Virus record (IMG/VR): IMGVR_UViG_3300027816_000051
Coordinates: 186,001 to 250,000 of that record
Length of the DNA: 64,000 nucleotides
Strand: one strand, 5' to 3'
Shown here one piece after another: positions 24,185-43,115 of this stretch. Position 1 is the stretch's first letter; every line of letters starts with the position of its first letter. The translations under genes were made by a program, and so were the position numbers. The notes beneath the pieces are model-generated. The model was given only the letters and a program-made list of their open reading frames with translations. It was not told the origin of the DNA and searched no databases.

Positions 24185-24976
24185 TCATACACGTCTCGTG
24201 TCGTCAATAAAAATTCTTACGTTGTGTTTCTCCCTGAACTTTTTTTCTAACTTATCAATAATATTATCTTGTAAGTTATAGGGGAAATCGGGACTACCTT
24301 TTTCGATACCATCTATGGTTTTAAATTTTGAATCAATGAACGGAATTAAATCTTTTTCATTTTTTATATCTTTTTTCCCGCGTACCACAACTCTAATAAC
24401 TGGGTTGTCTACGAGTTCATACTCATGGTCATCTATCTTTCCTTTTTTATATACGGTGTAATACACCGTCGCTCTCTTTATTAAAATTTTTATCCACTCA
24501 TCCATTTGGTCAAAAAACTTAGGTAATACATCTTGAGGTAATACAAGGGAATATTGGCCAGACAAAATGTACTGTATTGTTGGATTATCATACCTGAGGT
24601 GATTGGTATAATTTCTGTCAAACGATTCTTCTAATAAATCAATAATTAAAGGTCCGTTAATAAGGTGAAGTGACCTTATACTTAACTTGAACGGAAATTC
24701 ACCGAACCCAATCTCTTGAATTTTTCTGCCAACCAAAATGTAGATGTCATTAATCATCTCAGGATAAACCCTGTTAACATCAACAAATAGTTTCAATAGA
24801 CATTCACTTATAAAAGGGACACCATCTATTGTTCCTTGGGTTGGGTCTTCAGCTACAACATATTTTATTGTAATGGTCCCATCGGTCAGTCCTTTAAGTG
24901 AGTCACCTATTTGTGGTAAAGCGTCGTGAAACTTTTGGACATCATCACCTTCTAAAGTTTCTGTTAGTTTAATCAT
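24185..24976 (-). CDS. Hypothetical protein (probable start MIKLTE)
   Basis: TATTTATA on the sense strand just upstream of ATG 24976. Confidence 0.6.
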   Translation of the reverse strand: MIKLTETLEGDDVQKFHDALPQIGDSLKGLTDGTITIKYVVAEDPTQGTIDGVPFISECLLKLFVDVNRVYPEMINDIYILVGRKIQEIGFGEFPFKLSIRSLHLINGPLIIDLLEESFDRNYTNHLRYDNPTIQYILSGQYSLVLPQDVLPKFFDQMDEWIKILIKRATVYYTVYKKGKIDDHEYELVDNPVIRVVVRGKKDIKNEKDLIPFIDSKFKTIDGIEKGSPDFPYNLQDNIIDKLEKKFREKHNVRIFIDDTRRV

Positions 24977-25274
24977 CTCATTTACTTTACATATAAATAC
25001 CATTCCCCCGCCAAACTAAATCGACCTCCTCAGGTCCCTGAACTAACAAGTGTTAGTTAGTTTGTGCCAAACAAAATCGGTACCGTCGGACGATTCTGAG
25101 GATTCTGATTCCGCCAAACTAAATCGGTGGATTTATTGTTACAACATCAATTGTCTAAACAACCTTTCCGCCAAACTAAATTGACCATCTCAGGTCCCGT
25201 CGTCAGGATTCTCATTAAAAAAAAAATCCCGTGACGTTAATCACAGGATTTGGTTAAGAGACTTGAGTCGTCTA

Positions 25275-25544
25275 TTACATATTACTCAAGATACTCTTAC
25301 GGAACTCGAAAGCTTTCTTCTTGGAGGAGAAGTTCTGAGAGTAACGGGTTCCGTTAACGCTAGCACGTACACGGTAAGAGAAACCATCATAGTAGATGTG
25401 GTGTGAAACAGGTACGTAAGTACTTACGGTTGTTTTCATAGCCGGAGCTGCTACTGCTTTCTTCCCACCCTTTTTGGGGGCTGGAGCTGGTTTCGCCGCT
25501 GGTTTGCTGGCGGGTTTTTTAGTTGTGGACTTCTTTGTTGCCAT
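25275..25544 (-). CDS. Small basic protein: K/A/P-rich histone-like tail plus AP2-like DNA-binding domain
   Basis: MATKKSTTKKPASKPAAKPAPAPKK then HIYYDGFSYRVRASVNGTRYSQNFSSKKKAFEFR (three beta-strands plus helix pattern). Confidence 0.55.
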   Translation of the reverse strand: MATKKSTTKKPASKPAAKPAPAPKKGGKKAVAAPAMKTTVSTYVPVSHHIYYDGFSYRVRASVNGTRYSQNFSSKKKAFEFRKSILSNM

Positions 25545-25633
25545 AATATATTGATTTTGATATATAAAATATACACAAGAAAATCCTAAAAACCAAATCC
25601 TATAAAAAAATCTTTCAAAGAACTAATGCCAAA

Positions 25634-25954
25634 CTAAATCCACAGTATGATTCCCTCCTCAGGGTTATCAGGGTACCGTGACTCTTCTAAACATACACCA
25701 CATGTGGATGGTAATAATTGCTGCTTACCTTTTATTCCATCTACCTGAAATTGCGATAGAGGTGCTGGTATACTGAATCCACATATGTGACACTCTAACC
25801 TATATACGTTTAACTCACCCTTCCAATATAAATCAGTCAAGTTGAATTTCTTTCCCATCACTACGTTGTCATTAACGTCGGTAATGGTGTCTTCTATTAT
25901 TTCACCTGTGGTAGGGTCCGTGAAGTATACCTTGTCCCTGATGAAGAGTTTCAT
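25634..25954 (-). CDS. Hypothetical zinc-ribbon protein
   Basis: CHICG and CGVC; TAG stop lies inside a GCCAAACTAAAT motif. Confidence 0.6.
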   Translation of the reverse strand: MKLFIRDKVYFTDPTTGEIIEDTITDVNDNVVMGKKFNLTDLYWKGELNVYRLECHICGFSIPAPLSQFQVDGIKGKQQLLPSTCGVCLEESRYPDNPEEGIILWI

Positions 25955-26123
25955 TTACTCTTCCCCCTTTCTTCCAAACGTTGCAAATATTGTGAAAACA
26001 TCTTGGCCGCCATTGCTAACCTTTGAGGTTTAAAACAATATTTCTTATTAAGTCTAGCCATTGCTATCCTCATGAACTGTTCCTGAATCCGTGGTTCTAC
26101 TACTATCATGACTTTAAATATTG

Positions 26124-26585
26124 CTACAGGTGAGTATTGAATACATCAAAATCCCTAATTCCCATATTTTGTCTCTCCACTCTTGCGTTGTGCTGTAAAA
26201 ACGCTTGAATACCTTCACCGTGTGGTACGGCTTGAAATATTAGTTGCTGTTTAAATTGCTCTGAAGTAATAACTCGAACAACAGACAGTCCAAGTAATCT
26301 CATCCAAAATGGTTCGTCGACCATTACAGATTTAATCCTGAAATAGTTCACAGATTCTCGAGTCACACTGAAGACCCCTTTTCGTTCAATTACACAGTCA
26401 TCATAGAATTCATACCTCCAACAATCTACTTCGAAATATTTGTAGATATAGATGACTACCGCCAATGCACATGCATATGGGTGTACGAAGTAAGTTGCTG
26501 GTACCATGGCCAGCCAACCAATATTCAACCACTGAGATGGGGTGAATATGTGAATCGGTTCTTGAGGTTTCTGTGTATTGAACAT
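26124..26585 (-). CDS. Membrane protein with bacterial PH (bPH_2) domain
   Basis: Two TMs, then YEFYDDCVIERKGVFS..RIKSV..PFWMRLLGL. Confidence 0.75.
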   Translation of the reverse strand: MFNTQKPQEPIHIFTPSQWLNIGWLAMVPATYFVHPYACALAVVIYIYKYFEVDCWRYEFYDDCVIERKGVFSVTRESVNYFRIKSVMVDEPFWMRLLGLSVVRVITSEQFKQQLIFQAVPHGEGIQAFLQHNARVERQNMGIRDFDVFNTHL

Positions 26586-26589
26586 AATA

Positions 26590-26880
26590 CTAAGTTTTTG
26601 TTACAGTTTTATTTGCGGTTGTTCCTGCTGGTGAACATCCACATGGTGATGCTTTTCTACACATATTCATAAATGTCAGTGTATCCACTAAGTATACCTT
26701 CATGGTATCACCATATGAACCTTTATCCCATTGGGGTTTAATTACTTCTCGGGTTATGTTGCAATCGATAAAGTAAACTTTGTGTCCACTTACTAATGCC
26801 TTGTCCCCGTGTTGGATATATGTTCGATTGGTTCCACAACCAACTAATCCAAGTGCTGATATAAATAATATTTTTTTCAT
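26590..26880 (-). CDS. Putative lipoprotein
   Basis: MKKILFISALGLVG-C lipobox-like. Confidence 0.55.
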   Translation of the reverse strand: MKKILFISALGLVGCGTNRTYIQHGDKALVSGHKVYFIDCNITREVIKPQWDKGSYGDTMKVYLVDTLTFMNMCRKASPCGCSPAGTTANKTVTKT

Positions 26881-26904
26881 AACTCCAAATCTAAATAAAA
26901 TTTA

Positions 26905-27507
26905 TTACTTCTCAATATGGATATCACGAAAAAATTCAAAATCAATTACTTCGTCTTCCTCCACCGCGAAGTCAACACACATTGCAATAATCTTTCCTCT
27001 TTTCTTTGCAACATATAATGTGTAAGAACCATCACCAAAACCAGATGAAGAAACTACTCCCTCGTCATACACACCGTATCGACTATCACCCAAGGTACGA
27101 GAACACATACTGATGTACCATTTTTCACCTTGTTCTTCCTCACGGGCCTCGGTCATTTCTTTCCAAGGTGTTACACCAAAGAATGAAATGTCACCATCTC
27201 CCAAACCGATTCGTTCTGTAATAGAGTCGTCACGGTAAGATTCTTTGGAGAAGATTCCACACTGACCTGAGTCGACACCGATGGTTGCAGGATAATCTTT
27301 CCAAACCAGTTTGTCGTCTTTATGGTCCTCGTGTATGACAAGTATCATTGAACTTCGGATACCCCAATCACCACAGTCGTGACGCTTAACATAGGTGTCA
27401 TACATACCGGGTTTAACACCACTAACAATTCCCTGACACCAGGTTGGGATTGTGTAACAAGGGTCGGATACTACGACCTCAGTTCCTAATTTGATTTTGT
27501 TTGTCAT
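26905..27507 (-). CDS. DUF4241-like protein
   Basis: VVSDPCY, IGVDSGQ, SSSGFGDGSY. Confidence 0.65.
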   Translation of the reverse strand: MTNKIKLGTEVVVSDPCYTIPTWCQGIVSGVKPGMYDTYVKRHDCGDWGIRSSMILVIHEDHKDDKLVWKDYPATIGVDSGQCGIFSKESYRDDSITERIGLGDGDISFFGVTPWKEMTEAREEEQGEKWYISMCSRTLGDSRYGVYDEGVVSSSGFGDGSYTLYVAKKRGKIIAMCVDFAVEEDEVIDFEFFRDIHIEK

Positions 27508-27598
27508 ACACCTATTGATTTTTAATGTTCTATATTCAAAATTAATACATTTACTAGAATATTCCAAATTTTTCTAGAATATTTTTGCCAATCTAAAT

Positions 27599-27898
27599 TC
27601 AGTACATCTCCTCCTTCAGTTGCTTTGCTTTCTCAAAGTGTTTCTTGATTTGGTTTGCAAAACTCACCAAACGAGCTTTGGTCTTTGCGTATGCGTAGAA
27701 CTGACAATACTCACTGTCAAAATCGATTCCACTACAATTGATGTTTCTCTTGACACAGTCCTCGAAGTCATAGGCAGAGTCGTAGTCGTGACCAATTGCT
27801 TCTTTTTTAGGGAAACCAGTAAGTGTCCACTGTGCTCCATCCCAATCACCTTTGTAAATTGAGAGTCCAATACCTGTTGAAATTGTTTCTGTTTTCAT
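27599..27898 (-). CDS. Hypothetical protein
   Basis: Operon member; stop abuts the motif at 27587. Confidence 0.55.
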   Translation of the reverse strand: MKTETISTGIGLSIYKGDWDGAQWTLTGFPKKEAIGHDYDSAYDFEDCVKRNINCSGIDFDSEYCQFYAYAKTKARLVSFANQIKKHFEKAKQLKEEMY

Positions 27899-27902
27899 AC
27901 CT

Positions 27903-28382
27903 CTACTTTTTAAATGTTGATTTGAATACTCGGATGTTTTCCTCAATCTCGAGGTCCATAGCCTGAGCTAACTTCATCTTGGCTTTGGTCATGAACTCCT
28001 TGTCGCCAGACAAAATCTCCAAATCCTCCTCAGGGTGAAACTCAATCTTGTCGACAATAACACGGACATCTTTTGACTTCTTATCCTTACGGTAGAAAGG
28101 AGTCCTTGCGTAGATGTACTCACGAACTTGAGTCAACTTGATATCACTGAGGTCCTCACGAATTCTCATTTGGATTATAATCTCCTCGAGTGATGCTAGT
28201 TTTTCGAATGTTAATTTACTCTCAGTGATTAAGTTCTTATATAAACCAGTGAGCTCTTTAAGCTCCTTAGAATATTTCTTACCATCACCGTGGTTGATGA
28301 ATTGGTCATATGAACTCAGTTCACTCTTTGACCCTACGATGTCAATGAAGACACCCTCGATTGTTTTATTTACTCGTCCCAT
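27903..28382 (-). CDS. Hypothetical protein
   Basis: 159-aa ORF in an operon. Confidence 0.6.
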   Translation of the reverse strand: MGRVNKTIEGVFIDIVGSKSELSSYDQFINHGDGKKYSKELKELTGLYKNLITESKLTFEKLASLEEIIIQMRIREDLSDIKLTQVREYIYARTPFYRKDKKSKDVRVIVDKIEFHPEEDLEILSGDKEFMTKAKMKLAQAMDLEIEENIRVFKSTFKK

Positions 28383-28654
28383 AATCTTTAAAAGAAGTTT
28401 AATACAGATTTTAACATGCCAAACAAAATTCGGGGTTCGGCTGTCCCGTCGGAAAATTTTACTTCAGAGTTTTCCATTTCTCTTTTCATTTGAATTGCTT
28501 CATCAACTTTAATCCGTTGCTCGATGGTTCTTGCGTGGTATTTGGATGAAACAATGACATTCTCTTGAGTTCTCAATGCGTCTACCCATTCTTGGTAGGT
28601 TAATTCTTCTTGAGGTTCTGCTGTCGATAATATTTTCAAATCTTCCATATGAAT

Positions 28655-29269
28655 TTATTTTACTTTTTCCTTTAGTTCTTCTTCGTATATTCTACGGATT
28701 TCTTTTGCGTCTTCCGTATCCACATAAGGGAATTGTGCAACGAAGTCATCAACACTAGTTTCGTTATCGATTGCATATTCCATCTCATTTTGGAAAAGGG
28801 ATTCCCAAAAGTATTCTTCGTCAAAACGATAGTTACCTTCGAGATAACCATAATCATCCTCAACCACTCCGTTTTGATTAATGGTTGTTTTGCCACAGAA
28901 ATCACTTCCACCCTCCGAGTAGAACAACTCCACATCCACACCATACATCTTGTGTAATACAACACCAAAGTTTATTGGTGGTGACCACGCCGTATCAGGT
29001 GACATATAGATAACATCCTTCTCAAAAGTGAAGTTGCAGTCGGCGTATGACACATCCCATTTGGTACCATACCAACTGGTGTTTGCATTATACCATCCAC
29101 CTTGTTCGTATTCTTCTTTACTAATTTCAGGTTCACGACCGATTAAGGACTCAAACACGATACACTTTTCAGGTTCGGACTTTGGAACATCATTAAGGAT
29201 ACGAGTGAGCAAACCAATCTGCTCTTCAGTACCTGTTATTGTTATTGAGTTTTGACACCAGTTCGGCAT
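28655..29269 (-). CDS. DUF1281/YubB ferredoxin-like family protein
   Basis: MPNWCQN, WYGTKWD, DTAWSPP. Confidence 0.7.
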   Translation of the reverse strand: MPNWCQNSITITGTEEQIGLLTRILNDVPKSEPEKCIVFESLIGREPEISKEEYEQGGWYNANTSWYGTKWDVSYADCNFTFEKDVIYMSPDTAWSPPINFGVVLHKMYGVDVELFYSEGGSDFCGKTTINQNGVVEDDYGYLEGNYRFDEEYFWESLFQNEMEYAIDNETSVDDFVAQFPYVDTEDAKEIRRIYEEELKEKVK

Positions 29270-29352
29270 AATCTATCTATTTTAAGCTGTTCATTAATAC
29301 AAAGGTATAAAGAGGATACCATTTTACCAAACGATATCCTCTTTTTATTTTT

Positions 29353-29898
29353 TTACCAGGATGATTGGTAGTAGAAATCTCCTTCCTTTTCCTCTAATAA
29401 GGGAGTGATTTGTTTGATGGTATCTTCTAAACCTTTTAGATACCACTCATCATATTCAGTTCCCCCGAAAAAGAAACCTGCTTGGGTTGGTAGTAGTTCT
29501 TCCGCAAGTTCGGTGTCGGTGTAGACATCGATGTCCTCATACAATTCCTTACCACCTTGCCAACCAACTTTCACCTGAACCTTCTTCGTCGGAGAATTTT
29601 TCAGGGTTGCTCTAACTTTCCCACAGGTATCCACCAACTCTTTGAGTTTTTCGCGGTCTACATAATACTCACCACAATCGTCCTCACCGTCCTGTACATT
29701 GTTTACAAACCATGCGTGGATGTGGTTGTCCTTTCTCCAATACGCCACCTGTTCCTCGATGGATGAAATTCTGTCGGGTTGAATTTCCTTAACTACTTTC
29801 CCACCCTTCTTAACTGTCACCTTGTGAAGTTGTTCGGGTTCCATATGTGACCAATTTTTCACATAGGTTTTCTTCTTGAGATACATGTCTAATCCCAT
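29353..29898 (-). CDS. Conserved phage hypothetical protein (MGLDMY...YWRK family)
   Basis: MGLDMYL, YWRKDNHIHAWF, GFFFGG, YYQSSW. Confidence 0.7.
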   Translation of the reverse strand: MGLDMYLKKKTYVKNWSHMEPEQLHKVTVKKGGKVVKEIQPDRISSIEEQVAYWRKDNHIHAWFVNNVQDGEDDCGEYYVDREKLKELVDTCGKVRATLKNSPTKKVQVKVGWQGGKELYEDIDVYTDTELAEELLPTQAGFFFGGTEYDEWYLKGLEDTIKQITPLLEEKEGDFYYQSSW

Positions 29899-29902
29899 TG
29901 TA

Positions 29903-30205
29903 TTATTGATTTAAGATGTTAAACAATTTTGTACCAAGACCAAATAACTTTTCGGCCTTATCTTCTCTTTTTCCTTCACTACACACGTAGATTGACTTAT
30001 CAGGTAGAACACCCAAATCCAACATTCCAAATGTGTGTTCCCATTTACCATTGATGAATTGTTCACCTGTAAACCTTTCTTGTGCGTTGTACGCTTCGTA
30101 GGTCATTTTCAATTTGACATTATTCTCATTTTGAATAATTCTCATCTCATATGACTTATCTCTCAAGTGAGATGATACCGAGTGGATTACTTTTTCTTTT
30201 TTCAT
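29903..30205 (-). CDS. Hypothetical protein (probably leaderless)
   Basis: ATG lies 4 nt after TATCTTTG. Confidence 0.6.
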   Translation of the reverse strand: MKKEKVIHSVSSHLRDKSYEMRIIQNENNVKLKMTYEAYNAQERFTGEQFINGKWEHTFGMLDLGVLPDKSIYVCSEGKREDKAEKLFGLGTKLFNILNQ

Positions 30206-30265
30206 AATACAAAGATATAACAATTTTTCTTTTATACCAAATTTATTTTCAACTTTGTTGCCAAA

Positions 30266-30577
30266 CTAAATGTCCTCGACGGTAAAGTCATCCGACTCAA
30301 GGATGTCTATGATGTGTGCGAGTTCATATATGTCCAATTCAACTAACGAGAGTTCTATACTATCACCAAAACTTTCCGACATCACAGTACCATCAGGTAA
30401 TATTCCATACGCCGCGTATTGAACTCTACCATCATCTTCGTACATACCTTCGGTAACCCAAACTCCAAACACATTTCTAAATGTGATTTGTTGGTTCTCA
30501 CCAATAATGGTCGAACATTTGTTTTTAATTTTTTTGATTATTTCCTCTTGTAGGTCTTGAATTTTTTTCTTGTACAT
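30266..30577 (-). CDS. Hypothetical protein
   Basis: Own promoter; TAG stop inside the motif. Confidence 0.65.
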   Translation of the reverse strand: MYKKKIQDLQEEIIKKIKNKCSTIIGENQQITFRNVFGVWVTEGMYEDDGRVQYAAYGILPDGTVMSESFGDSIELSLVELDIYELAHIIDILESDDFTVEDI

Positions 30578-30699
30578 AATAAAATGTTTTAGTAATACAA
30601 AGATATAACAATTTTTCTTTTATACCAAATTTATTTTCAACTTTGTTGCCAACCTAAATCAATGTCCATCCCATAATATATGTGTACGAGGTTTTTAAT

Positions 30700-30725
30700 A
30701 AAAAACCCCACATTTCTGTGGGGTT
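30700..30725 (-). terminator. Intrinsic terminator (same hairpin reused near 34213, 40725, 41816)
   Basis: aaaaaaccccacatttctgtggggtt. Confidence 0.85.
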
Positions 30726-30740
30726 CTCTCCTTAAACCAA

Positions 30741-31331
30741 TCAATCATAAGTAATCCTCGCGTATTTTACTGTGACCCAGTTGTCCTTTACAACAATCTT
30801 ACCCATGTCCTCACCATCCTCGCCTTTCCAATAAACCTCACCATTTAATTTCACACCCCACTTCTCAAAGAAATGATTGATGATATATTTCAACCACTCA
30901 ACGTAGTTGTAAAACTTCTCACCACCATCCCATATTAGATGAGTTCCATTTTCATCCGTAGTCCACTGACACCATAAACCAGGTTGACATTTACCCTCTC
31001 GTGTTCTCAAATCATTTTGTGTCCACCTTTCGTTGTAGTTAGTTGTTAGAAAATCTAGTTGACCTGGAGGTGTATTGTAATCGACAATACTATCATCCTT
31101 GTCTTGACCTGCGAACCCATTACCACCAACAAAGTATTCACCATCGTTTCCGTAGGTTTCTTCTTTTGGTAGAAAAGGGTTTCCGTGTTCACCCTTAAAT
31201 AACTCATAGAGTTTCTCAACATTTCGTTTCATTCTACGAGTGTTGTTGAACTTGGTGATGTAATTCTTTTCATCACTAGTAAGTGGACGACTGAATTCAA
31301 ATCCACCTTCGAAATCGGTTGTGTATCCCAT
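30741..31331 (-). CDS. Conserved phage hypothetical protein (MGYTTDF family)
   Basis: QPGLWCQW, WDGGEKFYNYVEWL, WKGED. Confidence 0.7.
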   Translation of the reverse strand: MGYTTDFEGGFEFSRPLTSDEKNYITKFNNTRRMKRNVEKLYELFKGEHGNPFLPKEETYGNDGEYFVGGNGFAGQDKDDSIVDYNTPPGQLDFLTTNYNERWTQNDLRTREGKCQPGLWCQWTTDENGTHLIWDGGEKFYNYVEWLKYIINHFFEKWGVKLNGEVYWKGEDGEDMGKIVVKDNWVTVKYARITYD

Positions 31332-31410
31332 ACTTTTTTAATTTAATTGTATTACAAAGATATAACAATTTTTCTTTTATACCAAATTTTTTTTCAACTT
31401 TGTCGCCAAA

Positions 31411-31887: not shown

Positions 31888-31908
31888 GTTGTTTTATTTT
31901 AGGCCAAA

Positions 31909-32298: not shown

Positions 32299-32316
32299 CT
32301 TGATTGGTTTATAATA

Positions 32317-32348
32317 CAAATATAATACTAATTCTTTTATATTCCAAA
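32317..32348 (-). promoter_or_regulatory. Bacteroidota promoter, representative of about 28 similar ones between 27.5 and 49.6 kb
   Basis: TTTG-N20-TATATTTG on the - strand; similar elements near 30210, 30598, 31355, 33016, 34062, 37123, 40360, 42755, 44112, 46549, 46856. Confidence 0.88.
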
Positions 32349-35655: not shown

Positions 35656-36028
35656 TTTCGTTTCTAATTTTAGATTAAAGATTTAATGTGGGTACAAAGA
35701 TATAATAGTTTTTCTTTTTTTCCAAATTTTTTTTAAAGTTTTTTCAAAAAAGTTTTTCCACATACATCTTTGACTTTGTGTATGACAAACATACTAAAAC
35801 TTTTAAGGATATTCACCAAGAATACTAGTATTTCTTGCCAAACAAAATCGTCCAGCCGTCGTCCAGTTTTCCCCCTGGCGTATGTTAAAACGAAGATTTT
35901 CAGTATTTTAGAAACAAAAAAAGGGATTCCGAAGAACCCCTTTAGTGTGTCAAACCAAACACAAATTACAACTATGAAATGTAATCCAATAAAAAGTTAC
36001 ACATCATATTTTACATTGTCAAGTGTTT

Positions 36029-37102
36029 TTAGATTACAGGTAATACATCAAGTTCTTTACCTTTTTCTTGGTAGAACAAACTTCCACCATCATTTCCCTC
36101 ATCATCCATAGAAGGAATACATAGTGTTCCGTTGTCCAACTCAATACAAATTGGTCTCTTGTACCAACCCATAAGTTCCATTTCCTCATCGGTAAGATAA
36201 CGAACTGATTTGATAACTCGTCCCTTTAGGACTTTCTCACTTTGATTTACCCAATGGGTAGTTATTTCTTGATTTGTCATACGAATGGTTTTTTACAAAG
36301 GTATAAAGATTATTTCTTTTTACAAGTTATTTTTGCCAATCAATATTCACTGTTCACCATGTCTTCGGGTATCTTTCCAAAATATCTTGGGGATAGAGAA
36401 CACCATTACCATTAAGTAATACATCCTCCCACCAACGAATACCAATTTGTAAACGGGGTACTGCGAATTTTGGAATGTCATCTTGATGGACTCTAAAGAA
36501 CACATCGTTTCTTCCACCCGTTTCAGGTTCGCCTGGTGTAGGTAGTGTTTCTACTTCCTCACAATATTTTGCACGAACACCGAATTCTTGTTTTAACCAC
36601 TTTTCGAATTCCTTAATGTTGGACTTACCGATAAGAGTTGCGGGCCAAACACAAACTTGACTGAAATTTTTCATGTTACAAATAATTTAATTGACAATAA
36701 TCCTCAAGGTCAACTAATGGTATGCGACCATATTTTACGGAAGAATAATACCCTTGAGTTTCGTACCCTTTCTTCCATTGTTCGAACGCCTTACACGCCG
36801 CTCTGTGCGACTTGTAGTAAGGTACATCCCTTTCGAGTGTGAACCCATCAGGGGATAAAATTTGAATTTTCTGTGCCATATGATTAACGATAAAGAGTTA
36901 CATAGTCACCGAAATACTTTTCAATCACGCCAATCAAATTCTCATAATCCCCACTCATCATCTCCTCTTGAATTTTCTTGGAGTCCAAACCGAGTTGTTT
37001 CGCCCATTTTGAGGCGAGACCAATAAGAACGAACGCGTTCCCATCAGGTCCTGTGAGGTCAATCTCAATACCTCCTTGTTTTTCATCAATAGATTTTATC
37101 AT
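36029..37102 (-). other. Four small hypothetical genes (36029-36280, 36354-36674, 36676-36879, 36884-37102)
   Basis: Co-oriented ORFs with promoters; motifs SMDDEGNDGG, GGRND and LTGPDGNAF. Confidence 0.6.
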
Positions 37103-37244
37103 TGTCTTGTCGTTTTATAATACAAATATAAATCAGTAATTAATATAATCCAAATATTTTTTTATTTTTCTTGCCAATCTAATTTCCGTCCTGAACCGTG
37201 ACTCAGAGTCCTGAGAAATAAAAAAACCCCTTTCGGGGTTTCTC

Positions 37245-37652
37245 TTACGAGGTGTACTTGTTATAGAACACTTCCATTCGTTCCATTACCACATCTAAAC
37301 TCCAACCACTTGTGTCTTGGTCGTTCCAATGAAAGTAACCCATTTGAAATTTCTCAACACAATTAGGTATTGATTTATCGTGTACGAACTCGGGGCAACC
37401 ACCATCAACAAAATCATCTTGGTAGTTACCACGATACTCAATTACGATATCCTTACCATTGAACTTTTTGGTGTAAGTTACTTTTTGAGTATACTTTTTG
37501 GTTTGAACTTTACCCTTTCGTGTCCAACCATGTTCGGACATAAAAACATCCATTTGTTGGTTAACACTTTCTTTTATCTTAGAAAGTTCATTCTCTTTTT
37601 CCTCTTTTTGTTTTTTCAAGAAGGAATAATAATCTTTAATTGTCGTGTACAT
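37245..37652 (-). CDS. Hypothetical protein
   Basis: Cassette with promoter and terminator (aaacccc-tttc-ggggttt). Confidence 0.6.
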   Translation of the reverse strand: MYTTIKDYYSFLKKQKEEKENELSKIKESVNQQMDVFMSEHGWTRKGKVQTKKYTQKVTYTKKFNGKDIVIEYRGNYQDDFVDGGCPEFVHDKSIPNCVEKFQMGYFHWNDQDTSGWSLDVVMERMEVFYNKYTS

Positions 37653-37977
37653 ATGTTTATTAATTTAACACCACAAATATAAAAGTATATAGAATATAAT
37701 CCAATAATTTTTTTATTTTTTTTGCCAAACAATTTGGTGGATTCCAGGTCCCCGCAGCAGGAAACCAGTAAAACCAGAAGCAATGACTAGAAAAAACCAG
37801 TTGTGCAACAGCAGCAACCAGCCCTTGATTTTGGTTGGCGAACCCAAACCATTGATTTTATTGGGTTTACAGAATGCCAAACAAAATCACGAACAGCAGC
37901 GCAACCAGCAGCAACTTCGGAGCAATAAAAAACCCCCACCTTTTGAGTGAGGGTTTTAACCAATAAAAATGAAACAA

Positions 37978-38667
37978 CTAACTCTCTGCGACCAATAGTT
38001 TTCGGTATTCTTTTTCGGTCAAGTGTCTAACCGAACCACTTTCACACTTCTTTTTCTTCTTAATAAGAACACAATCACCTTGCCGAACAATTTTCTCAAT
38101 TCCACCTTCTTTAATGTCTGTTTGAATTGTCCACGCGATTGCTTGAATAGGGGTAATCTTTTCACCAAAGTTCTCACTACTACTCAACCATTTGTCTTTG
38201 TTGTTAGTACGATAAACACTTTGTGCGTCCACCCAAATAAAATACTCCCTATCAGTTGAGGTGTCCTTACACTTTACAAAGTGAACATTATCTGGTCTAC
38301 GCCAACCAAATTCTGCACCTTCACCCCAAACATTTCCTTTTACTTCATAAAGTTCGTAGGTGTCCTCAAAGTTTTTCTTAATGAGTTCACCATTCTCACC
38401 AACCCAAAATGTTTCTTTTGAAATCGTTTCGGACTTAATAAGTGTGGGGTTCACTTCTTTGTAAATGTTTTCCAAACCCAAACAACCTACGGCGATACGC
38501 CTCTGTTCAATGTTTTGAATTTCGGTTGTAATTTCTTTGAAAGTAATAGGAACAATATCTTCCCAAATATCTTCCAAACCATTAAAGGGTGTATTACGAT
38601 ATTTTGTTTTTAATAAACGACAACCAATGTTGTAGTCAAAACGAGTGTTTTCAATTATGATTTTCAT
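37978..38667 (-). CDS. DUF6745-like protein
   Basis: NIEQRR, YELY, VKCKDTSTDREY, AIAWT. Confidence 0.5.
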   Translation of the reverse strand: MKIIIENTRFDYNIGCRLLKTKYRNTPFNGLEDIWEDIVPITFKEITTEIQNIEQRRIAVGCLGLENIYKEVNPTLIKSETISKETFWVGENGELIKKNFEDTYELYEVKGNVWGEGAEFGWRRPDNVHFVKCKDTSTDREYFIWVDAQSVYRTNNKDKWLSSSENFGEKITPIQAIAWTIQTDIKEGGIEKIVRQGDCVLIKKKKKCESGSVRHLTEKEYRKLLVAES

Positions 38668-38687
38668 TTCTTTTACTTTTTAATTGT

Positions 38688-39341
38688 TTACATATCACTT
38701 TCAGTCAATACCAAAAATTGTCTTGTTAGTGAAACGAATAATGTGTTATCTACAATTTTAGGTAATACATCACTATCCACTTCTTCTGTGTTGAATTGAA
38801 ACCAATCCTCTTGTTCGCCGTCTGCGTTTTCAAATTCGTGGTTCTCAACAACATCAGTAATCTTTTCCAATAATGTATCAGAAATCTGTTCTTCCTCATC
38901 ATTGAGAATACAATCACCTTTGTAGTTAATTGAACTTCCGTCTTGACTGCCAACCAAATTAAGGACTTTGGTTCTAATAAACTCAACCTCTTTTTCTGTG
39001 AGTTCAACAACAACTTCTTCTGTAAAACTCTCTGACCATTCCGCCTGTGCAGATTTGTAATACGAGAAAGTGGGGTTTTCCTCATCATCTTCATCAAGTG
39101 TAATCTCAACACTTCCAAATTCACCAATGTAGTGTCCGTCAGAGTTCACATAAAATTCTACTCTACGGAAAACATCATCATCAAAGAAACTATCAAGTTC
39201 ACCACTCTCAACATCTTTGTTTTCTGAATTGTAAAAATTAAAGTGATAATCATTCATACTATCACCACCACAACTAAATTCCATAGTTGCGCTTGTAATA
39301 CCTAACTCTTTCCAGAGTGCGATTGCTTCATTAGTTTGCAT
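38688..39341 (-). CDS. Acidic protein, DUF6878-like
   Basis: GITSATMEFSCGGDS N-terminus. Confidence 0.5.
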   Translation of the reverse strand: MQTNEAIALWKELGITSATMEFSCGGDSMNDYHFNFYNSENKDVESGELDSFFDDDVFRRVEFYVNSDGHYIGEFGSVEITLDEDDEENPTFSYYKSAQAEWSESFTEEVVVELTEKEVEFIRTKVLNLVGSQDGSSINYKGDCILNDEEEQISDTLLEKITDVVENHEFENADGEQEDWFQFNTEEVDSDVLPKIVDNTLFVSLTRQFLVLTESDM

Positions 39342-39735
39342 ATTCGTGGATTTTTTGGTTTAATTGTTTAACTACTTCGTACGCTTCGGGGTTGTCTAAA
39401 TCTTTTACCCCATTACACATCCAGGGTTGAACCTCTAAATGTTTAAGGTAATCTTGTGGGGTTGGAACGAACTTCATTCTAAAATCTTCTGCGATATGTA
39501 ACATCGCAATATCAACAACATCAACTGACTTACCATCACTATTAGTAATGTTGTAACCGAAGATTTTTGGAATGATAGTGTATGCGAACCAAGTGTTGTG
39601 GGTGAGTAACCGAGAACTATTATTGTTCATTGTCGCTTTCGGACTATCAATAAGTTCGTGGATAGGTAAATAATCTTCTACCTTACCACCCCAACGCTTG
39701 ACGCTGCTCTTTGAGTGAATTAGTGGGTTCGCCAT
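39331..39735 (-). CDS. DUF6915-like protein
   Basis: MANPLIHSKSSVKRWGGKVEDYLPIH..DS, HIAED, VPTPQD. Confidence 0.65.
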   Translation of the reverse strand: MANPLIHSKSSVKRWGGKVEDYLPIHELIDSPKATMNNNSSRLLTHNTWFAYTIIPKIFGYNITNSDGKSVDVVDIAMLHIAEDFRMKFVPTPQDYLKHLEVQPWMCNGVKDLDNPEAYEVVKQLNQKIHEYAN

Positions 39736-39737
39736 AG

Positions 39738-40016
39738 TTAATCCCAAATTTGAGTGATAGTACCTTCAAACGGATTGTACTCAACTTGTTTTCCCATAAC
39801 CCAATCACCTTGCTCAACTTTGAGTGGTTTGTGTTCGTTTGAGAAACTTCCATCGGGTTGTTCGTGTCTTAATACACTATCCTTTCTAACTTCAACTTCT
39901 GCGAAATCTGTTTGTGTTTCATCAACAATGAAATCACCATACAGAGTGTGCTGGTTAACACCCTCACCCTTTAAGAGTGTGTGTTTTTTCTTCGGAGTTA
40001 CTTTCTTGTTTTTCAT
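39738..40016 (-). CDS. Small His-containing conserved protein
   Basis: GEGVNQH, LRHE, EH, QVEYNP. Confidence 0.55.
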   Translation of the reverse strand: MKNKKVTPKKKHTLLKGEGVNQHTLYGDFIVDETQTDFAEVEVRKDSVLRHEQPDGSFSNEHKPLKVEQGDWVMGKQVEYNPFEGTITQIWD

Positions 40017-40776
40017 TTTTAGATTGTTTTATGGTACAAATATAAATCTATTTTTTGTATAAGTGAATTTTTTTTTTATTTTTTTCGCCAAACAAAAATC
40101 ACCCGTGAAGGTGATTTCGTCATTCGTTTCGTACAATATCTAATAGGTCATTCACAATTTCTTTTTTGGTTAATGAAAGAAGTTGATTACCTCTGAACGA
40201 CAACAACTTAAAGGTATTCATTCCTTTAATACCTTTTTCACCCTCTACATAGTAATCCATTTTCCACTTACCCAAATACTTAACATTCCCTATGTGTTTT
40301 ACATAGTAGACATTACCGATAGTTAGTTTTTCTAAAACCATATAAATTAATTTAGAACACAAATATAAATCTATATTTTGTATAATCCAAATTTATTTTT
40401 ATATTTCTTGCCAAACAAAAGTTATCCTGTGCTGCATCATCACCATCTTGGATACTTATTATTATGATAGAAGGGATACTTTATACATTAGGAGTTGAGT
40501 TCGTATTAGTCATTATATTGTTTTGTTATGAGTTAAGAAGACAACTAAAAGAAGATTATCAAGAGAAACCATTTAGATTCTGGGAAGATACATGAACATC
40601 TCCTGGTTGCGCGCAGCCCTCGATTTTGGTTGGCTCGAACCCAAAGTATTGATTTTATTGGGTTTAGAGTTTGCCAAACAATTTTCACTGTTTGCGCGTA
40701 GCTCACCATCAACTTTGGAGCAATAAAAAACCCCACATTTCTGTGGGGTTCTTATTAATTGAGTACCTAACCAATC

Positions 40777-41631
40777 TTAAACCAACTCAACCAATTCTTT
40801 GAAAATTTGACGTTCCCTTTGTCCATAGGTTCCAAACATCTTGTTTTCAGAGTTATCACCTTTACTTAAGGAATGTGTGGTGTACTTAGTAACCCCACTG
40901 AACAATCCCCAAAGGTTATCACCTTTCTCTTTTACTTCACCATTAAGGTCTACGTAGAAACGAGAAAGACGATTACGAGTCACGGTCGACACATCTTTGT
41001 CACTATTCAAATCAACATCTTTCATGATATTGAACAATGTACGTGTAACCCAATCCTCTTGTTTCTTGGTCATCTTCGTTTCAGAAAGTTTCTTAATGTC
41101 TTCGAACATTTCTTTTTCTTCCACGAGTACCCCCTCCAAACCACGACAGATATCATCGATTCTCATCTCCATGTTTTTGGTGTGACGAATTTTCGCATTC
41201 AAGTTACGGAACGCTGCGAAGAATGAATTCTGACAACTGATTGTAATATTACTTGGACCGAATGCCAAACTAGTTGACCCATCGAAGGAATTCACACCAG
41301 TGATGAAACCCTCAACTCTGTCATTGCCCAATTTCAAATCATTTGATTTCAATTGAAGGTATACTTTCTCACCCCCACCAAAGTAACCACCTTTGTGAAT
41401 TGGTAAACCAACCTGTTGAGATACCTTGTCTAGTAAATCAACCATCTGATGATTTTGATAAGGAAAGTAACCATCACCATGTACAGACAAAACAGTGTTT
41501 GTGTCCTCACGGATGATTGCTTTACTCTTAGGAACAATGATACCACTTTCTGTAGTGATACTTTCTTCTCTTACGGTCCAATTTAGGCCGACTTTGTTGA
41601 GAACTTGCTGTGTGCGATTTTCTTGTGACAT
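40777..41631 (-). CDS. DUF932/DUF945 family protein
   Basis: GLNWTV, YQN, NSFDGS, CQN, IRHT, LWGLFSGVTKYTTH. Confidence 0.8.
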   Translation of the reverse strand: MSQENRTQQVLNKVGLNWTVREESITTESGIIVPKSKAIIREDTNTVLSVHGDGYFPYQNHQMVDLLDKVSQQVGLPIHKGGYFGGGEKVYLQLKSNDLKLGNDRVEGFITGVNSFDGSTSLAFGPSNITISCQNSFFAAFRNLNAKIRHTKNMEMRIDDICRGLEGVLVEEKEMFEDIKKLSETKMTKKQEDWVTRTLFNIMKDVDLNSDKDVSTVTRNRLSRFYVDLNGEVKEKGDNLWGLFSGVTKYTTHSLSKGDNSENKMFGTYGQRERQIFKELVELV

Positions 41632-42035
41632 ATGGATGTTTTTTAATTTGATACAAATGTAATACACTTTTCATTATAATCCAAATAAATCTTTATTTTT
41701 TTTTTCTGACCCCAGAATTCACCGTACCATCTCAGAAATTGGTTGGCATCTGTCATACACCCGCCAAACTAAATTGAACACGGGATTTGCCGGCGACGAA
41801 TTTTTTTAGCAAACAAAAAACCCCCACATTTCTGTGAGGGTTCCTTAACCAAATAAAACTAATCTATGAACGACAAATCAAGTGTATTACACTTTAACCA
41901 AATATAGGAATTAAAACAAACATTGTCAATAGGAAAAACATAAGTATTACAATGCCACCCAAAATTCCATCCCAAAATTCCTTTCGGTCTTCTTGGTAAA
42001 CTTCTTTGAAAGTTGAAAACATTTCCTTTAACATA

Positions 42036-42395
42036 TCAATAATTGTTTTGATTATCGTAGTTGTCTCGGTAAACTCTTTTACGAGGTTGGTTGGTTCGTT
42101 GACCATTCCAATGGCGGTCTCCATTACCACCATTTTCGTAGTATGAGTTATTAATCATTTCATCAACCGATGGAACTTCAAAGTCCATATCACAACTTCC
42201 ATTCATCATCTTCCACTGAATTTCATAAATGGTTTTAATGTCTTCTTCAACATTGACATATGTACCATCTATGTATTCAATCTTCGTTGCTATCTTGTCG
42301 TTTCTTTTATCCAAGATACTAAAAATGTTTTTGACATTTTGTAGATTGACAAGTGTTGGGGTTCCTTTACCTTGATAAGTGAGTTTAATTAACAT
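42036..42395 (-). CDS. Hypothetical protein
   Basis: Own promoter; LVN..TKIEY..VNVEE pattern. Confidence 0.55.
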   Translation of the reverse strand: MLIKLTYQGKGTPTLVNLQNVKNIFSILDKRNDKIATKIEYIDGTYVNVEEDIKTIYEIQWKMMNGSCDMDFEVPSVDEMINNSYYENGGNGDRHWNGQRTNQPRKRVYRDNYDNQNNY

Positions 42396-42488
42396 TTTTT
42401 GTTTTTTTAATTATTGGACAAATATACAAATGAATTTTTGGAATATACAAACGATTGTGCCAATCAAAATCGGCGGTTCACCATCTCC

Positions 42489-42734
42489 TCAGATATTTCC
42501 CGAAAAGACAAGAAAATTGTTGGGTGGTAAATAAGTGTCGGGAGTGTCAATGATTTCATATTCATCTTCACCCTCAACTACACCAAGAGTCCTACCACTA
42601 TCCCAACGGACATTGATAACACCATGACCAACATGATAAATTGTTCCCATTGAACCTTCCTCAACGGGGTTAGGGTCGTTCTCCATTGAAACGAGACGAA
42701 TTCTTTTTCCGATTAATTTTTCGTTTATTTTCAT
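42489..42734 (-). CDS. DUF4314 family protein
   Basis: RIRLVSMENDPNPVEEGSMGTI..VRWDSGRTLG. Confidence 0.75.
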   Translation of the reverse strand: MKINEKLIGKRIRLVSMENDPNPVEEGSMGTIYHVGHGVINVRWDSGRTLGVVEGEDEYEIIDTPDTYLPPNNFLVFSGNI

Positions 42735-42809
42735 ATCTGTATTAGTTTATTAATACAAATATACAACTTATTTTATGATATCCAAATTTTTTTTAGGATA
42801 TTTTGCCAA

Positions 42810-43115
42810 TCAAATTGATGTCAATCTGAATATTCGTTTGAACTCTTTTTCAATTCTTCTGAATCTTATTTCGTCTTTTTCTCTAACATAACGCGATATT
42901 GTTTTGTTAAATTGAAAGTTAGAACGAGTAAGAAGATAGATAAATTTTCTCCTCTCCACTTTGTGACCTTCAAAGTTGTATGCCCATTCAACATCAACCG
43001 AAATATAATTTTCAGTTTCAATGATGTCACACACTTTACCTTCTTTTTCCGATTTTTTTAGGTAGTTCATTACTTCCTCATCGGTATTCAATGATATGTC
43101 GTTATAGTTTTTCAT
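42810..43115 (-). CDS. Hypothetical protein (probably leaderless)
   Basis: ATG 4 nt after TATATTTG; TGA stop inside the motif at 42805. Confidence 0.6.
   Translation of the reverse strand: MKNYNDISLNTDEEVMNYLKKSEKEGKVCDIIETENYISVDVEWAYNFEGHKVERRKFIYLLTRSNFQFNKTISRYVREKDEIRFRRIEKEFKRIFRLTSI

What the first reader, a model, noticed from the sequence alone, without database searches (positions are those of the whole stretch)
24557..42816. Motif is written into coding sequence and supplies stop codons
Seen: same-orientation copies lie inside ORFs at 24557, 24728, 26513, 28005, 28418, 29559, 34342, 36929, 38082, 38301, 38949 and 41264 (peptides such as ILVG, NIGW, ILFG, NLIG, EFGW, NLVG). They often fill long operons that have no intergenic space. 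Five unrelated genes end in Ile-stop encoded by the motif itself (ATT-TAG or ATT-TGA; stops at 25634, 30266, 31411, 31909, 42810). Inference: selection for regular spacing at DNA level beyond promoter control. The stop overlap recalls integron cassettes and may mark junctions where genes were captured.
Basis: partly seen in the sequence, partly recalled or inferred. Interest (0 to 1): 0.65.

Follow-up and report, generated by a model that had tools for sequence, protein, structure and literature searches.

The report
Cassette-boundary word in a giant phage
A 12-letter DNA word marks the edge of about fifty small promoter-gene-terminator units in one arm of an uncultured giant phage. It is also kept inside some genes and lies where related phages have gained or lost genes. 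The stop codons it supplies are a side effect of tight packing.

Summary
The motif is real. On the minus strand it reads (G)ATTTwGkTTGGC(R). All but 2 of its 68 strong copies in the 288-kb phage record lie in one 26.6-kb leftward arm, window 24.2-50.6 kb. Copies inside coding sequence are far above codon-shuffle expectation: 7-9 observed against 0.2-2.2, 0 of 1000 shuffles. They use all three frames, keep their synonymous positions in a relative that is about 78% identical, and break up the two long promoter-less operons. The five Ile-stop overlaps are exact. They are not beyond chance (5 used, 3 expected), and they are lost or read in another frame in relatives, so they are a by-product of packing. 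The motif is not a terminator tail. It lies 35-70 nt after canonical terminators and 9 or 18 nt before Bacteroidota-type -33/-7 promoters, often with an inverted partner. Gene-cassette gains and losses between relatives break at the motif. No integrase or resolvase is encoded, and each cassette has its own promoter, so this is not an integron. The closest known system is the PeSL regulatory cassettes of T4-type phages. New here are the extra word, which differs between lineages (a distant relative uses AATGTTCAACGGC in the same place), and its upkeep inside genes. The molecular function is inferred, not shown.

The parts
24185..50610 (-). Leftward arm of about 45 small genes. Nearly all motif copies and most host-type promoters of the genome lie here.
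24727..24741 (-). In-CDS copy (ILVG), 18.9 bits, in the 263-aa gene 24185-24976
28004..28018 (-). In-CDS copy (EILSG), 15.5 bits, in ORF 27903-28382. Homologues in L067 and L069 carry their own lineage's motif at about the same place. L071 has none there.
28417..28431 (-). In-CDS copy (ILFG), 22.5 bits, 10 codons before the stop of gene 28388-28648. Syntenic copies occur in L067 and L071.
29558..29572 (-). In-CDS copy (VGW), 19.3 bits, mid-gene in 29353-29844. Its core is kept in L012 although the flanks have diverged.
34341..34355 (-). Weak in-CDS copy (13.5 bits), lost in L010/L011
36928..36942 (-). In-CDS copy (NLIG), 18.7 bits, in the 72-aa gene. Only 28 of 120 homologues have G at this residue.
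38081..38095 (-). Weak in-CDS match (TTCGGC, 14.3 bits), explained by the invariant peptide KIVRQGDC
38300..38314 (-). In-CDS copy (EFGW), 19.9 bits, in a variable, gap-prone loop of the 229-aa protein
38948..38962 (-). In-CDS copy (NLVG), 14.7 bits, in the 217-aa gene; core kept in L012
41263..41277 (-). Weak in-CDS copy (14.3 bits) inside the DUF932 domain
25627..25641 (-). Copy whose TAG is the stop of gene 25634-25954
30259..30273 (-). Copy whose TAG is the stop of the 103-aa cassette gene 30266-30577, followed 18 nt later by a -33/-7 promoter
31404..31418 (-). Copy whose TAG is the stop of the SprT-like gene 31411-31887
31902..31916 (-). Copy whose TAG is the stop of the L5-gp82-like gene 31909-32298
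42804..42818 (-). Copy whose TGA is the stop of gene 42810-43115
45422..45548 (-). Typical module, in order: canonical terminator (45523-45548), GC-rich spacer, motif (45471-45485), 18-nt A-rich tract, -33/-7 promoter (45422-45453)
37826..37889 (-). Motif plus inverted partner with a 34-nt loop. Similar pairs lie at 33158-33222, 40621-40686, 43203-43266, 45991-46054, 46925-46989, 47627-47689 and 49167-49219.
25009..25183 (-). Four tandem copies, each preceded by a GC-rich stretch, 47-57 nt apart
48111..48269 (+). Three 72-nt tandem repeats, each holding an inverted-orientation copy
30271..30587 (-). Cassette (gene 30266-30577 plus module) absent from relatives L010-L012. The junction lies in a shared stretch of about 70 nt holding motif and promoter.
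37177..37673 (-). Cassette (gene 37245-37652) absent from L010/L011. The switch from left-like to right-like sequence maps to TTGGC.
40086..40359 (-). Cassette (gene 40120-40341) absent from L010-L012. The switch maps to the motif.
42809..43103 (-). Cassette (gene 42810-43115) absent from L010-L012
45178..45472 (-). Cassette (gene 45187-45399) absent from L010-L012. The shared repeat runs from the terminator to the motif and ends at TTGGC.
46589..46603 (-). Single copy where L010/L011 carry an extra 475-nt cassette flanked only by 17-21 nt repeats of the motif
34900..35655 (-). ParB/DUF262-like 251-aa protein, conserved in this arm in three lineages. It is only a candidate for the factor that reads the motif.

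Best explanation
The word (G)ATTTwGkTTGGC(R) is a cis-element that differs between lineages. It forms the shared edge of about 45 self-contained cassettes in one hyperplastic arm of an uncultured giant phage of about 290 kb. That arm is probably expressed early, and the phage most likely infects a Bacteroidota host.

Shown:
- Order of a cassette: gene, canonical hairpin/T-run terminator, 35-70 nt of GC-rich DNA, the word, sometimes a loop of about 36 nt plus an inverted copy, an A-rich tract of 18 or 9 nt, TTTGG (-33), 19 nt, TAnnTTTG (-7), the next gene.
- The word is conserved far more than its flanks.
- It is replaced by an unrelated word at the same place in a distant lineage.
- It is the point at which cassettes come and go between relatives.

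Inferred:
- It is a recognition site read at the DNA level by a sequence-specific factor. That factor is encoded by the phage or is specific to the host, and it acts on these promoters or on this arm.
- Because it is the one sequence shared by otherwise unrelated cassettes, recombination between copies adds, removes and swaps cassettes, as proposed for PeSLs.
- Where genes are packed with no space between them, the site is written into coding sequence in whichever frame fits, and selection keeps it.
- Where a gene abuts the next cassette, its reading frame runs into the word and stops at the TAG or TGA that the two loose positions (-3 and -1) allow. That gives Ile-stop.
For: - Specificity: 50 of 52 minus-strand and 16 of 16 plus-strand copies of at least 14 bits lie in the arm.
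- Layout: searches give the order of parts. 13 copies are followed by a promoter at fixed spacing (18+-1 nt nine times, 7-9 nt four times). Strong terminators lie 35-70 nt upstream. The promoter type is that of Bacteroidota (PMC6847099), and such promoters cluster in the arm. The phage has a sigma factor but no RNA polymerase that I could find.
- Constraint: against L012 the core is 93% identical while the flanks are 62-75% identical. In-CDS cores are 98% identical, and 23 of 24 third positions are kept against 68% elsewhere.
- In-CDS enrichment and spacing.
- The in-CDS copies use all three frames.
- Lineage specificity: the variant ATATTGTTTGGCA in L067/L068, perfect inverted pairs in L016, and AATGTTCAACGGC with its own inverted partner in L069/L070. 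Each type is absent from the other lineage. L071 again has the TTGGC type.
- Syntenic in-CDS copies are kept although the proteins are only about 40-65% identical.
- Junctions.
- Stops are a by-product.
Against: - Nothing here shows binding or any effect on transcription.
- Many copies have no promoter at the fixed distance. These are the first arms of pairs, the tandem array and the in-CDS copies.
- The spacing between the two arms of a pair varies from 4 to 112 nt, which does not suit a simple dimeric operator.
- The distant lineage L069 has no copy in the operon where the window has three.
- The EILSG-site copy is absent in L071.
- The ParB-like candidate is equally diverged (42%) from the lineage with a similar word and from the lineage with a different word.
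- Whether recombination is ordinary homologous exchange or is targeted to the word cannot be told from about a dozen junctions.
Confidence: 0.5

Rival explanations
1. The word works in RNA. With its inverted partner it forms a hairpin in the message that is cut, stabilises the transcript or controls translation, and the in-CDS copies are internal processing or pause sites.
For: - Copies are co-oriented with transcription: 8 sense against 1 antisense in CDS.
- 14-15 copies have an inverted partner that folds into a 12-17 bp stem.
- Some copies lie between cistrons with no promoter, for example 31902.
- The 30 nt upstream of non-CDS copies are GC-rich and fold better than controls (median -5.5 against -1.9 kcal/mol, P = 2e-10).
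Against: - Most intergenic copies lie downstream of strong terminators and upstream of the next promoter, so they should be poorly transcribed.
- The sequence is conserved, not the pairing. The two arms disagree at position -1 in 14 of 15 pairs in this phage.
- In-CDS copies have no hairpin.
- No Rfam family matches.
- The contigs from RNA libraries were too short to tell.
Confidence: 0.2
2. The word is the end of a selfish palindromic element (REPIN-, MITE- or RPE-like), or the target of a dedicated site-specific recombinase or nuclease. That element spreads copies, inserts in frame into genes and captures cassettes, as in an integron.
For: - Inverted pairs favour a 35-38 nt interior.
- In-CDS copies lie at variable or indel positions of protein alignments.
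- L069 has a complete pair inside a gene.
- One extra cassette in L010 is flanked by only 17-21 nt of the word.
- Three junction switches map within the word.
Against: - There is no tyrosine or serine recombinase. The only Y1-transposase hit is 15 bits, below threshold, in an 81-aa ORF with no convincing catalytic motifs.
- Copies are confined to one arm and one orientation.
- Copies are held at syntenic places across lineages about 40-65% identical in protein, which does not suit a mobile element.
- Each cassette has its own promoter.
- Other junctions lie in longer shared terminator or promoter repeats, as ordinary homologous exchange predicts.
Confidence: 0.17
3. The word is the T-rich tail of intrinsic terminators. 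The coding-sequence copies and the stop overlaps follow from terminators placed at gene ends.
For: - In three places a GC hairpin abuts the word directly: 43266-43280, 32371-32387 and 42471-42483.
- The upstream 30 nt fold better than controls.
Against: - Canonical terminators with 6-9 T lie separately, 35-70 nt upstream.
- G at -2 and GGC are 95-97% conserved, which a U-tract does not need.
- In-CDS copies lack hairpins.
- In pairs the T-rich side comes before the stem and the A-rich side after it.
Confidence: 0.06
4. The in-CDS copies are chance products of codon usage or of a recurring peptide.
For: Two weak matches are of this kind. 38081 follows an invariant peptide, and 41263 lies in a conserved DUF932 domain.
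Against: - 0 of 1000 shuffles reach the observed counts, and there are 0 sense copies in the other 241.6 kb of coding sequence.
- Three frames and several different peptides are involved.
- Synonymous positions are kept.
Confidence: 0.02

Closest known systems
PeSL (promoter-early stem-loop) regulatory cassettes of T4-type phages (Arbiol et al. 2010, PMC2839356; Comeau et al. 2014, PMC4122927)
   Same: Repeated composite units of a strong host-type promoter, an A/T-rich upstream tract and a stem-loop terminator. They crowd a hyperplastic region of small ORFan genes. Stop codons of upstream genes lie inside the unit. Indels between close relatives are bounded by the units, which carry their own promoter and terminator.
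   Different: - The host promoter type is Bacteroidota -33/-7, and the phage is unrelated to T4.
- There is an extra strictly conserved, oriented 12-mer that belongs to neither promoter nor terminator, often with an inverted partner.
- That word is replaced by another word in a distant lineage.
- It is kept inside coding sequence.
- Mini-circles were not tested.
Integron gene cassettes (attC sites and the IntI integrase)
   Same: Arrays of single-gene units bounded by a short conserved core that is part of an imperfect inverted repeat. Stop codons sometimes lie in the site. Cassette content varies between relatives.
   Different: - No integrase is encoded.
- Every cassette has its own promoter, not a common Pc.
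- Most copies are single, not paired.
- The order of the arms is the reverse of attC: here GTTTGGC ... GCCAAAC, in attC RYYYAAC ... GTTRRRY (the attC consensus is from my own knowledge).
- The sequence is conserved, not the structure.
REP/REPIN (BIME) elements with their RAYT transposases, and Rickettsia palindromic elements inserted in frame in genes (from my own knowledge, not checked in papers here)
   Same: Short words specific to a lineage, often as inverted doublets with a spacer, placed after gene ends. RPEs are found in frame inside genes.
   Different: - No RAYT-like gene was found.
- Copies are restricted to one 27-kb arm and one orientation.
- Copies are tied to promoters at fixed spacing.
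- In-CDS copies are mostly single 12-mers, not whole elements.
Dispersed operator sets of a global phage or plasmid regulator, such as P1 C1 operators or RK2 KorB (a ParB-family protein) OB sites (from my own knowledge, a lead only)
   Same: Many copies of one short word upstream of many promoters of one element. The word co-varies with the element's own regulator. A ParB-like gene lies in the arm.
   Different: There are about 50-65 copies, some inside genes and some in tandem arrays. Binding is not shown, and the ParB-like protein does not visibly co-vary with the word.

Membership tests
Integron | An IntI-type tyrosine recombinase encoded next to the array | tested here: not met
   PF00589 has no match in the 92%-complete record, while the control genomes all match. 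No serine recombinase either.
Integron | attC: an imperfect inverted repeat at the 3' end of every cassette, inverse core RYYYAAC first and core GTTRRRY last | tested here: not met
   Only 14-15 of 51 copies have a partner. The arm order is GkTTGGC ... GCCAAmC, and the loop varies from 4 to 112 nt.
Integron | Promoter-less cassettes read from one common promoter | tested here: not met
   About 25 consensus -33/-7 promoters lie in the arm, roughly one per cassette.
Integron | Cassette gain and loss bounded by the site | tested here: met
   In 7 of 8 (L010) and 5 of 6 (L012) indel junctions, one alignment end lies within 20 nt of TTGGC.
PeSL-type regulatory cassettes | A repeated composite of a strong host-sigma promoter, an A/T-rich upstream tract and a stem-loop terminator, concentrated in a hyperplastic region of small genes | tested here: met
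   compared with PMC2839356. Promoter and terminator activity were not assayed.
PeSL-type regulatory cassettes | Indels and replacements between close relatives bounded by the cassettes | tested here: met
   Five window cassettes are absent from L010-L012, and there is one extra cassette in L010 and one in L012.
PeSL-type regulatory cassettes | Mini-circles formed by exchange between neighbouring cassettes | not testable with these tools
   This needs PCR or long reads from phage DNA. Contigs from RNA libraries show joints near modules, but these are not interpretable.
REP/REPIN with RAYT | A cognate HUH Y1 transposase (RAYT) in the genome | tested here: not met
   PF01797's best hit is 15.3 bits, below the cut-off, in an 81-aa ORF with no convincing catalytic motifs.
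REP/REPIN with RAYT | Copies outside genes, spread over the genome, in inverted doublets | tested here: not met
   Copies are confined to one arm, 10 are in CDS, and most are single.
Intrinsic terminator | A GC-rich stem-loop followed at once by a U-tract at the RNA 3' end | tested here: inconclusive
   Only 3 copies abut a hairpin. The canonical terminators lie upstream. RNA 3' ends are not available.
Polar genome words (Chi, KOPS) | Genome-wide distribution, with orientation tied to replication | tested here: not met
   There are no strong copies outside the arm apart from 2 inside a giant repetitive gene.
MITE | Terminal inverted repeats with target-site duplications, and empty sites in relatives | not tested
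   I did not look for target duplications. Paired copies are present at the same places in relatives.

The most novel reading that the evidence does not exclude
A clade of giant phages maintains a short oriented recognition word of its own along its early arm. The word is placed at every cassette edge and, where there is no intergenic room, inside genes at intervals of at most about 1.1 kb. It is read by a factor that is still unknown and co-evolves with it, since different lineages use different words. The same word is the preferred crossover point for gene-cassette capture. This would be a cassette system without a classical integrase. It would combine the roles of a regulatory operator and a recombination site, and it constrains protein sequences.
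Probability: 0.22. Interest if true: 0.8.

Novelty: new variant of a known kind. Interest (0 to 1): 0.6.

Why it matters
Hyperplastic arms full of small unknown genes are where large phages keep host-takeover and counter-defence functions, and how those genes are exchanged is only partly understood.

- This locus extends the PeSL idea to an unrelated, uncultured clade of giant phages that probably infect Bacteroidota.
- It adds two features not described for PeSLs. One is a short word at the cassette edge that differs between lineages. The other is selection that keeps that word inside coding sequence, so a non-coding signal shapes protein sequence.
- It gives a sequence rule for delimiting cassettes in metagenomic phage contigs.
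- It gives a clear target for finding the factor that reads the word, by binding and reporter assays.
- It is a caution for annotation. Gene callers run reading frames through motif-plus-promoter modules, as in the 135-137 aa versions of a 103-aa protein.

Tried and rejected
- Megablast and tblastn against deposited phages found no close relative, and one protein found only distant ones.
- Rfam gave nothing at gathering thresholds and nothing usable at E <= 1. There are no tRNAs.
- E. coli-type promoter matches are at chance level, 65 against 65.6.
- RNA evidence: the only holders were short Logan contigs from four RNA libraries, with 5-14% of the sampled words. They lie mostly inside genes and cannot show starts, ends or strand. 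They say nothing on whether the word is transcribed.
- Phage RNA-polymerase promoter idea: no T7-like polymerase match, although the control search was blind, and no multisubunit polymerase match. The inverted partners would also drive antisense transcription.
- The 'second cluster' at genome 110-120 kb is weak matches inside one 5,472-aa repetitive gene.
- RAYT idea: the weak Y1_Tnp hit is an 81-aa ORF with no convincing motifs.
- Compensatory pairing between the two arms is not seen in this phage.
- Co-variation of the ParB-like protein with the word is not seen.
- Conserved C-terminal peptide idea: the tails differ, and the families' profiles end 26-29 residues before the stop.
- No alternative genetic code was needed or used.

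Full report
**What the motif is.** The finding does not spell the motif out. Reading the twelve cited places and the five cited stops shows the + strand word GCCAAnCwAAAT. On the minus strand, which is the coding strand from about 24.2 to 50.6 kb, this reads (G)ATTT[T/A]G[T/G/A]TTGGC(A/G). The window is bases 186,001-250,000 of a single 288,260-bp virus record with 34% G+C. CheckV rates the record 92% complete.

A 15-nt matrix built from the TTGGC sites gives these counts:

| Strand | Copies of at least 14 bits, whole genome | Inside the arm |
|---|---|---|
| minus | 52 | 50 |
| plus (inverted orientation) | 16 | 16 |

The other two minus-strand copies, and the weak 'second cluster' at 110-120 kb, lie inside one repetitive 5,472-aa gene. 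The word therefore belongs to this arm, not to the genome as a whole.

**What the arm is.** It holds about 45 small genes on the minus strand. The few with families are typical accessory phage genes: GP88, DUF932, a ParB/DUF262-like protein, SprT-like, L5-gp82-like, DUF4241, Api92-like, DUF6915 and DUF3846.

- Consensus promoters of the Bacteroidota type cluster here. These have TTTG at -33 and TAnnTTTG at -7 (PMC6847099).
- E. coli-type promoter matches are at chance level.
- The genome encodes a sigma-70-family protein. I could find no RNA polymerase.
- From this I infer that the host is a Bacteroidota member and that host polymerase reads this arm, probably early. Neither point is shown.

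**Anatomy of a unit.** Printing every intergenic region in gene orientation gives a recurring order:

1. The stop codon.
2. A canonical terminator: a 5-6 bp G/C stem, often a GAAA loop, then 6-9 T.
3. 35-70 nt of GC-rich DNA (51% against 36% G+C) with weak hairpin potential.
4. The word.
5. Optionally a loop, most often 35-38 nt, plus an inverted copy.
6. An A-rich tract of 18 or 9 nt.
7. TTTGG, 19 nt, TAnnTTTG, about 22 nt, ATG.

The terminator scan finds 30 sites against 13.1 +- 3.8 in shuffles. The strong ones lie upstream of the word, not at it. The word is therefore not the terminator tail.

The 51 copies of at least 12 bits divide as follows:

| Class | Number |
|---|---|
| Intergenic | 36 |
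| Inside coding sequence | 10 |
| Overlapping a stop codon | 5 |
| Followed by a promoter at fixed spacing | 13 |
| With an inverted partner | 14-15 |

**In-CDS copies.** In the 44 block genes called by my own crude caller there are 8 sense copies of at least 14 bits and 1 antisense copy.

| Test | Observed | Synonymous shuffle | Codon-order shuffle | Shuffles reaching observed |
|---|---|---|---|---|
| At least 14 bits | 8 | 1.5 | 0.19 | 0 of 1000 |
| At least 12 bits, matrix retrained without in-CDS copies | 9 | 2.2 | 0.49 | 0 of 1000 |
| At least 14 bits, retrained matrix | 7 | 1.5 | 0.16 | 0 of 1000 |

- The other 241.6 kb of coding sequence hold no sense copy of at least 14 bits.
- The copies use all three frames and encode different peptides: ILVG, EFGW, VGW, NLIG, ILFG and others. 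No peptide is being selected.
- Against the relative L012, which is 78-84% identical in DNA, third codon positions are 68% identical overall. Inside the cores of the in-CDS copies, 23 of 24 are identical. By my own binomial estimate P is about 0.001.
- Not all copies are equal. 38081 follows a peptide that is invariant in 120 homologues, and 34341 is lost in L010. By contrast, the FG of EFGW and the G of NLIG are present in only 21-28 of 120 homologues, so the protein does not dictate them.
- In-CDS copies have no upstream hairpin.

**Spacing.** The gaps between the 49 copies of at least 14 bits have a CV of 0.56, against 0.97 for random placement. The largest gap is 1,141 nt, against about 2,270 expected. 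Without the in-CDS copies, two promoter-less operons would leave gaps of 2.2-2.7 kb. When the in-CDS copies are re-placed at random within coding sequence, P(largest gap <= 1,141) is 0.005 and P(CV <= observed) is 0.001. It is not universal. The distant lineage L069 has no copy of its own word in the syntenic four-gene operon, a gap of 2.2 kb.

**Stops.** The five Ile-stop cases are exact.

- 22 of the 51 copies contain TAG (A at -3) or TGA (A at -1).
- A long open frame reaches 18 copies, and 9 of those hold a stop triplet. 5 are in frame, where 3 would be expected (my binomial estimate, P about 0.15).
- In relatives the numbers used are 3 of 4 (L010), 0 of 2 (L012), 0 of 1 (L067) and 1 of 4 (L023).
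- The SprT-like gene of L012 reads the same word in another frame and stops 9 nt later.
- The gp82-like gene of L012 has a 1-nt deletion and reads through to a TAA. In L067 and L069 the protein ends about six residues earlier with no word at all.
- Homologues of the 103-aa cassette gene with CAG in place of TAG are called as 135-aa proteins that run on through the word and the promoter. A 51%-identical homologue ends differently, with the word 32 nt after its stop.
- The family profiles end 26-29 residues before these stops.
- The stop overlap is therefore a by-product of a gene abutting the next unit.

**Relatives and constraint.** IMG/VR holds identical contigs, relatives about 90% identical (L009-L011) and one 78-84% identical (L012).

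- In L012 the core of non-CDS copies is 93% identical, while the 20-30 nt on either side are 62-75% identical.
- A pattern scan found more distant phages with the same word. In L016, genes barely align with the window, yet the word occurs as perfect 14-17 bp inverted pairs between terminator and promoter. L023 also carries it.
- Through protein homologues I reached two further giant phages. L067/L068, from a 335-kb contig, use ATATTGTTTGGCA at 31 copies per 20 kb.
- L069/L070, from a 324-kb contig, have no TTGGC-type copy. At the same place after the terminators they have AATGTTCAACGGC with its own imperfect inverted partner, 13 sense copies against 1 antisense, two of them inside genes. That word is absent from the window.
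- L071 is again of the TTGGC type, with 9 copies in 8.4 kb against 0.28 expected.
- The in-CDS copy near the end of the small gene before the 159-aa gene recurs at the syntenic place in L067 and L071.
- In the 159-aa protein, each of the window, L067 and L069 has its own word within two codons of the same place, although the proteins are 41% identical. L071 lacks it. I rate that coincidence as suggestive only, roughly P = 0.03 by my own estimate.
- A word that changes as a set between lineages points to recognition by a factor that changes with it.

**Cassette junctions.** Five window segments, each holding one gene with its module, are absent from L010-L012. L010 and L012 each have an extra cassette.

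- In 7 of 8 junctions with L010 and 5 of 6 with L012, one alignment end lies within 20 nt of TTGGC. If junctions could fall anywhere in intergenic DNA, I estimate roughly P = 0.003 for the L010 set.
- In three junctions the switch from left-like to right-like sequence maps within or next to the word (40359/40086, 37673/37177 and 45472/45178).
- The extra L010 cassette is flanked by only 17-21 nt of the word.
- Elsewhere the shared repeat is longer, running from terminator to word or from word to promoter. The crossover cannot be placed, which is what ordinary homologous exchange between repeated regulatory DNA predicts.
- Segment identities between the window and L010 vary from 86% to 98% and change at these junctions.

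**Comparison with known systems.** This is the behaviour described for PeSLs in T4-type phages: composite promoter/terminator units in hyperplastic regions, stops of upstream genes within them, and indels bounded by them (PMC2839356; PMC4122927).

- It differs from PeSLs in phage and host type, in the extra oriented 12-mer that belongs to neither promoter nor terminator, in that word's replacement in another lineage, and in its upkeep inside genes.
- It is not an integron. There is no tyrosine or serine recombinase, every cassette has its own promoter, most copies are single, and the arm order is the reverse of attC.
- It is not a REP/RAYT system.

**Mechanism.** I commit to a DNA-level recognition site at the upstream edge of the promoter module. 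It is read by a lineage-specific factor, and recombination between copies is a consequence. I hold the whole picture at about 0.5 and the protein-binding step at about 0.35.

- The main rival is an RNA hairpin or processing role. Three points count against it: the word's place between terminator and promoter, the lack of compensatory change between arms, and the lack of hairpins at in-CDS copies. The public RNA data could not settle it.
- A selfish element or targeted recombination remains possible at about 0.17.

Noticed in passing
genome 107949-124367 (outside the window; G000:C1): A single 5,472-aa open reading frame. It is highly repetitive and holds the weak GCCAA..AA matches that looked like a second motif cluster.
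   Followed up: partly
window 48100-48320 (+ strand copies at 48111, 48183, 48255): Three tandem 72-nt repeats, each with an inverted-orientation copy (GAAATTAGATTGGCG), just downstream of two forward copies at 48304 and 48380.
   Followed up: no
window 25009-25183: Four forward copies in tandem, 47-57 nt apart, each preceded by a GC-rich stretch, upstream of gene 24185-24976. No consensus promoter follows.
   Followed up: no
window 24000-50700, minus strand; also L067 and L016: Companion words restricted to the arm and biased to one strand. GTATTACA (11 of 12 minus-strand copies in the arm) and GTATGACA (10 of 11) lie in the loops between paired copies. GACGACrG (6 of 8) lies 15-25 nt before many copies. 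In L016, GGTATTACA lies between -33 and -7 of the promoters.
   Followed up: partly
L069 and L070 (324-kb contig and a 30-kb contig): A distant giant phage uses a different word, AATGTTCAACGGC, with the partner CCGGTGAACATT, at the equivalent place. It also has repeated TTTTAACA boxes before its genes.
   Followed up: partly
genome 142709-142915 (276-aa ORF) and 40895-41080: A phage-encoded sigma-70-family protein (66 bits) and a second hit below threshold. No RNA polymerase was detected.
   Followed up: no
window 34900-35655: A ParB/DUF262-like protein with a DGQHR motif, kept in this arm in three lineages at 42% identity.
   Followed up: partly
window 46559->45443, 46902->45497, 43343->46141 (tables 5 and 5c): Contigs from RNA libraries join distant places that lie in or beside promoter or motif modules. 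This would be expected if relatives in nature carry the cassettes in another order. There is one contig per joint, at low depth.
   Followed up: no
P0242, P0246, P0248 (homologues of window 30266-30577): Public gene calls of 135-137 aa are the 103-aa protein extended through the motif, the A-rich tract and the promoter. This is an annotation artefact that such modules invite.
   Followed up: yes
window 49993-50610 (+): A zinc-metallopeptidase-like gene (Peptidase_M54/zincin) on the opposite strand at the upstream end of the arm.
   Followed up: no
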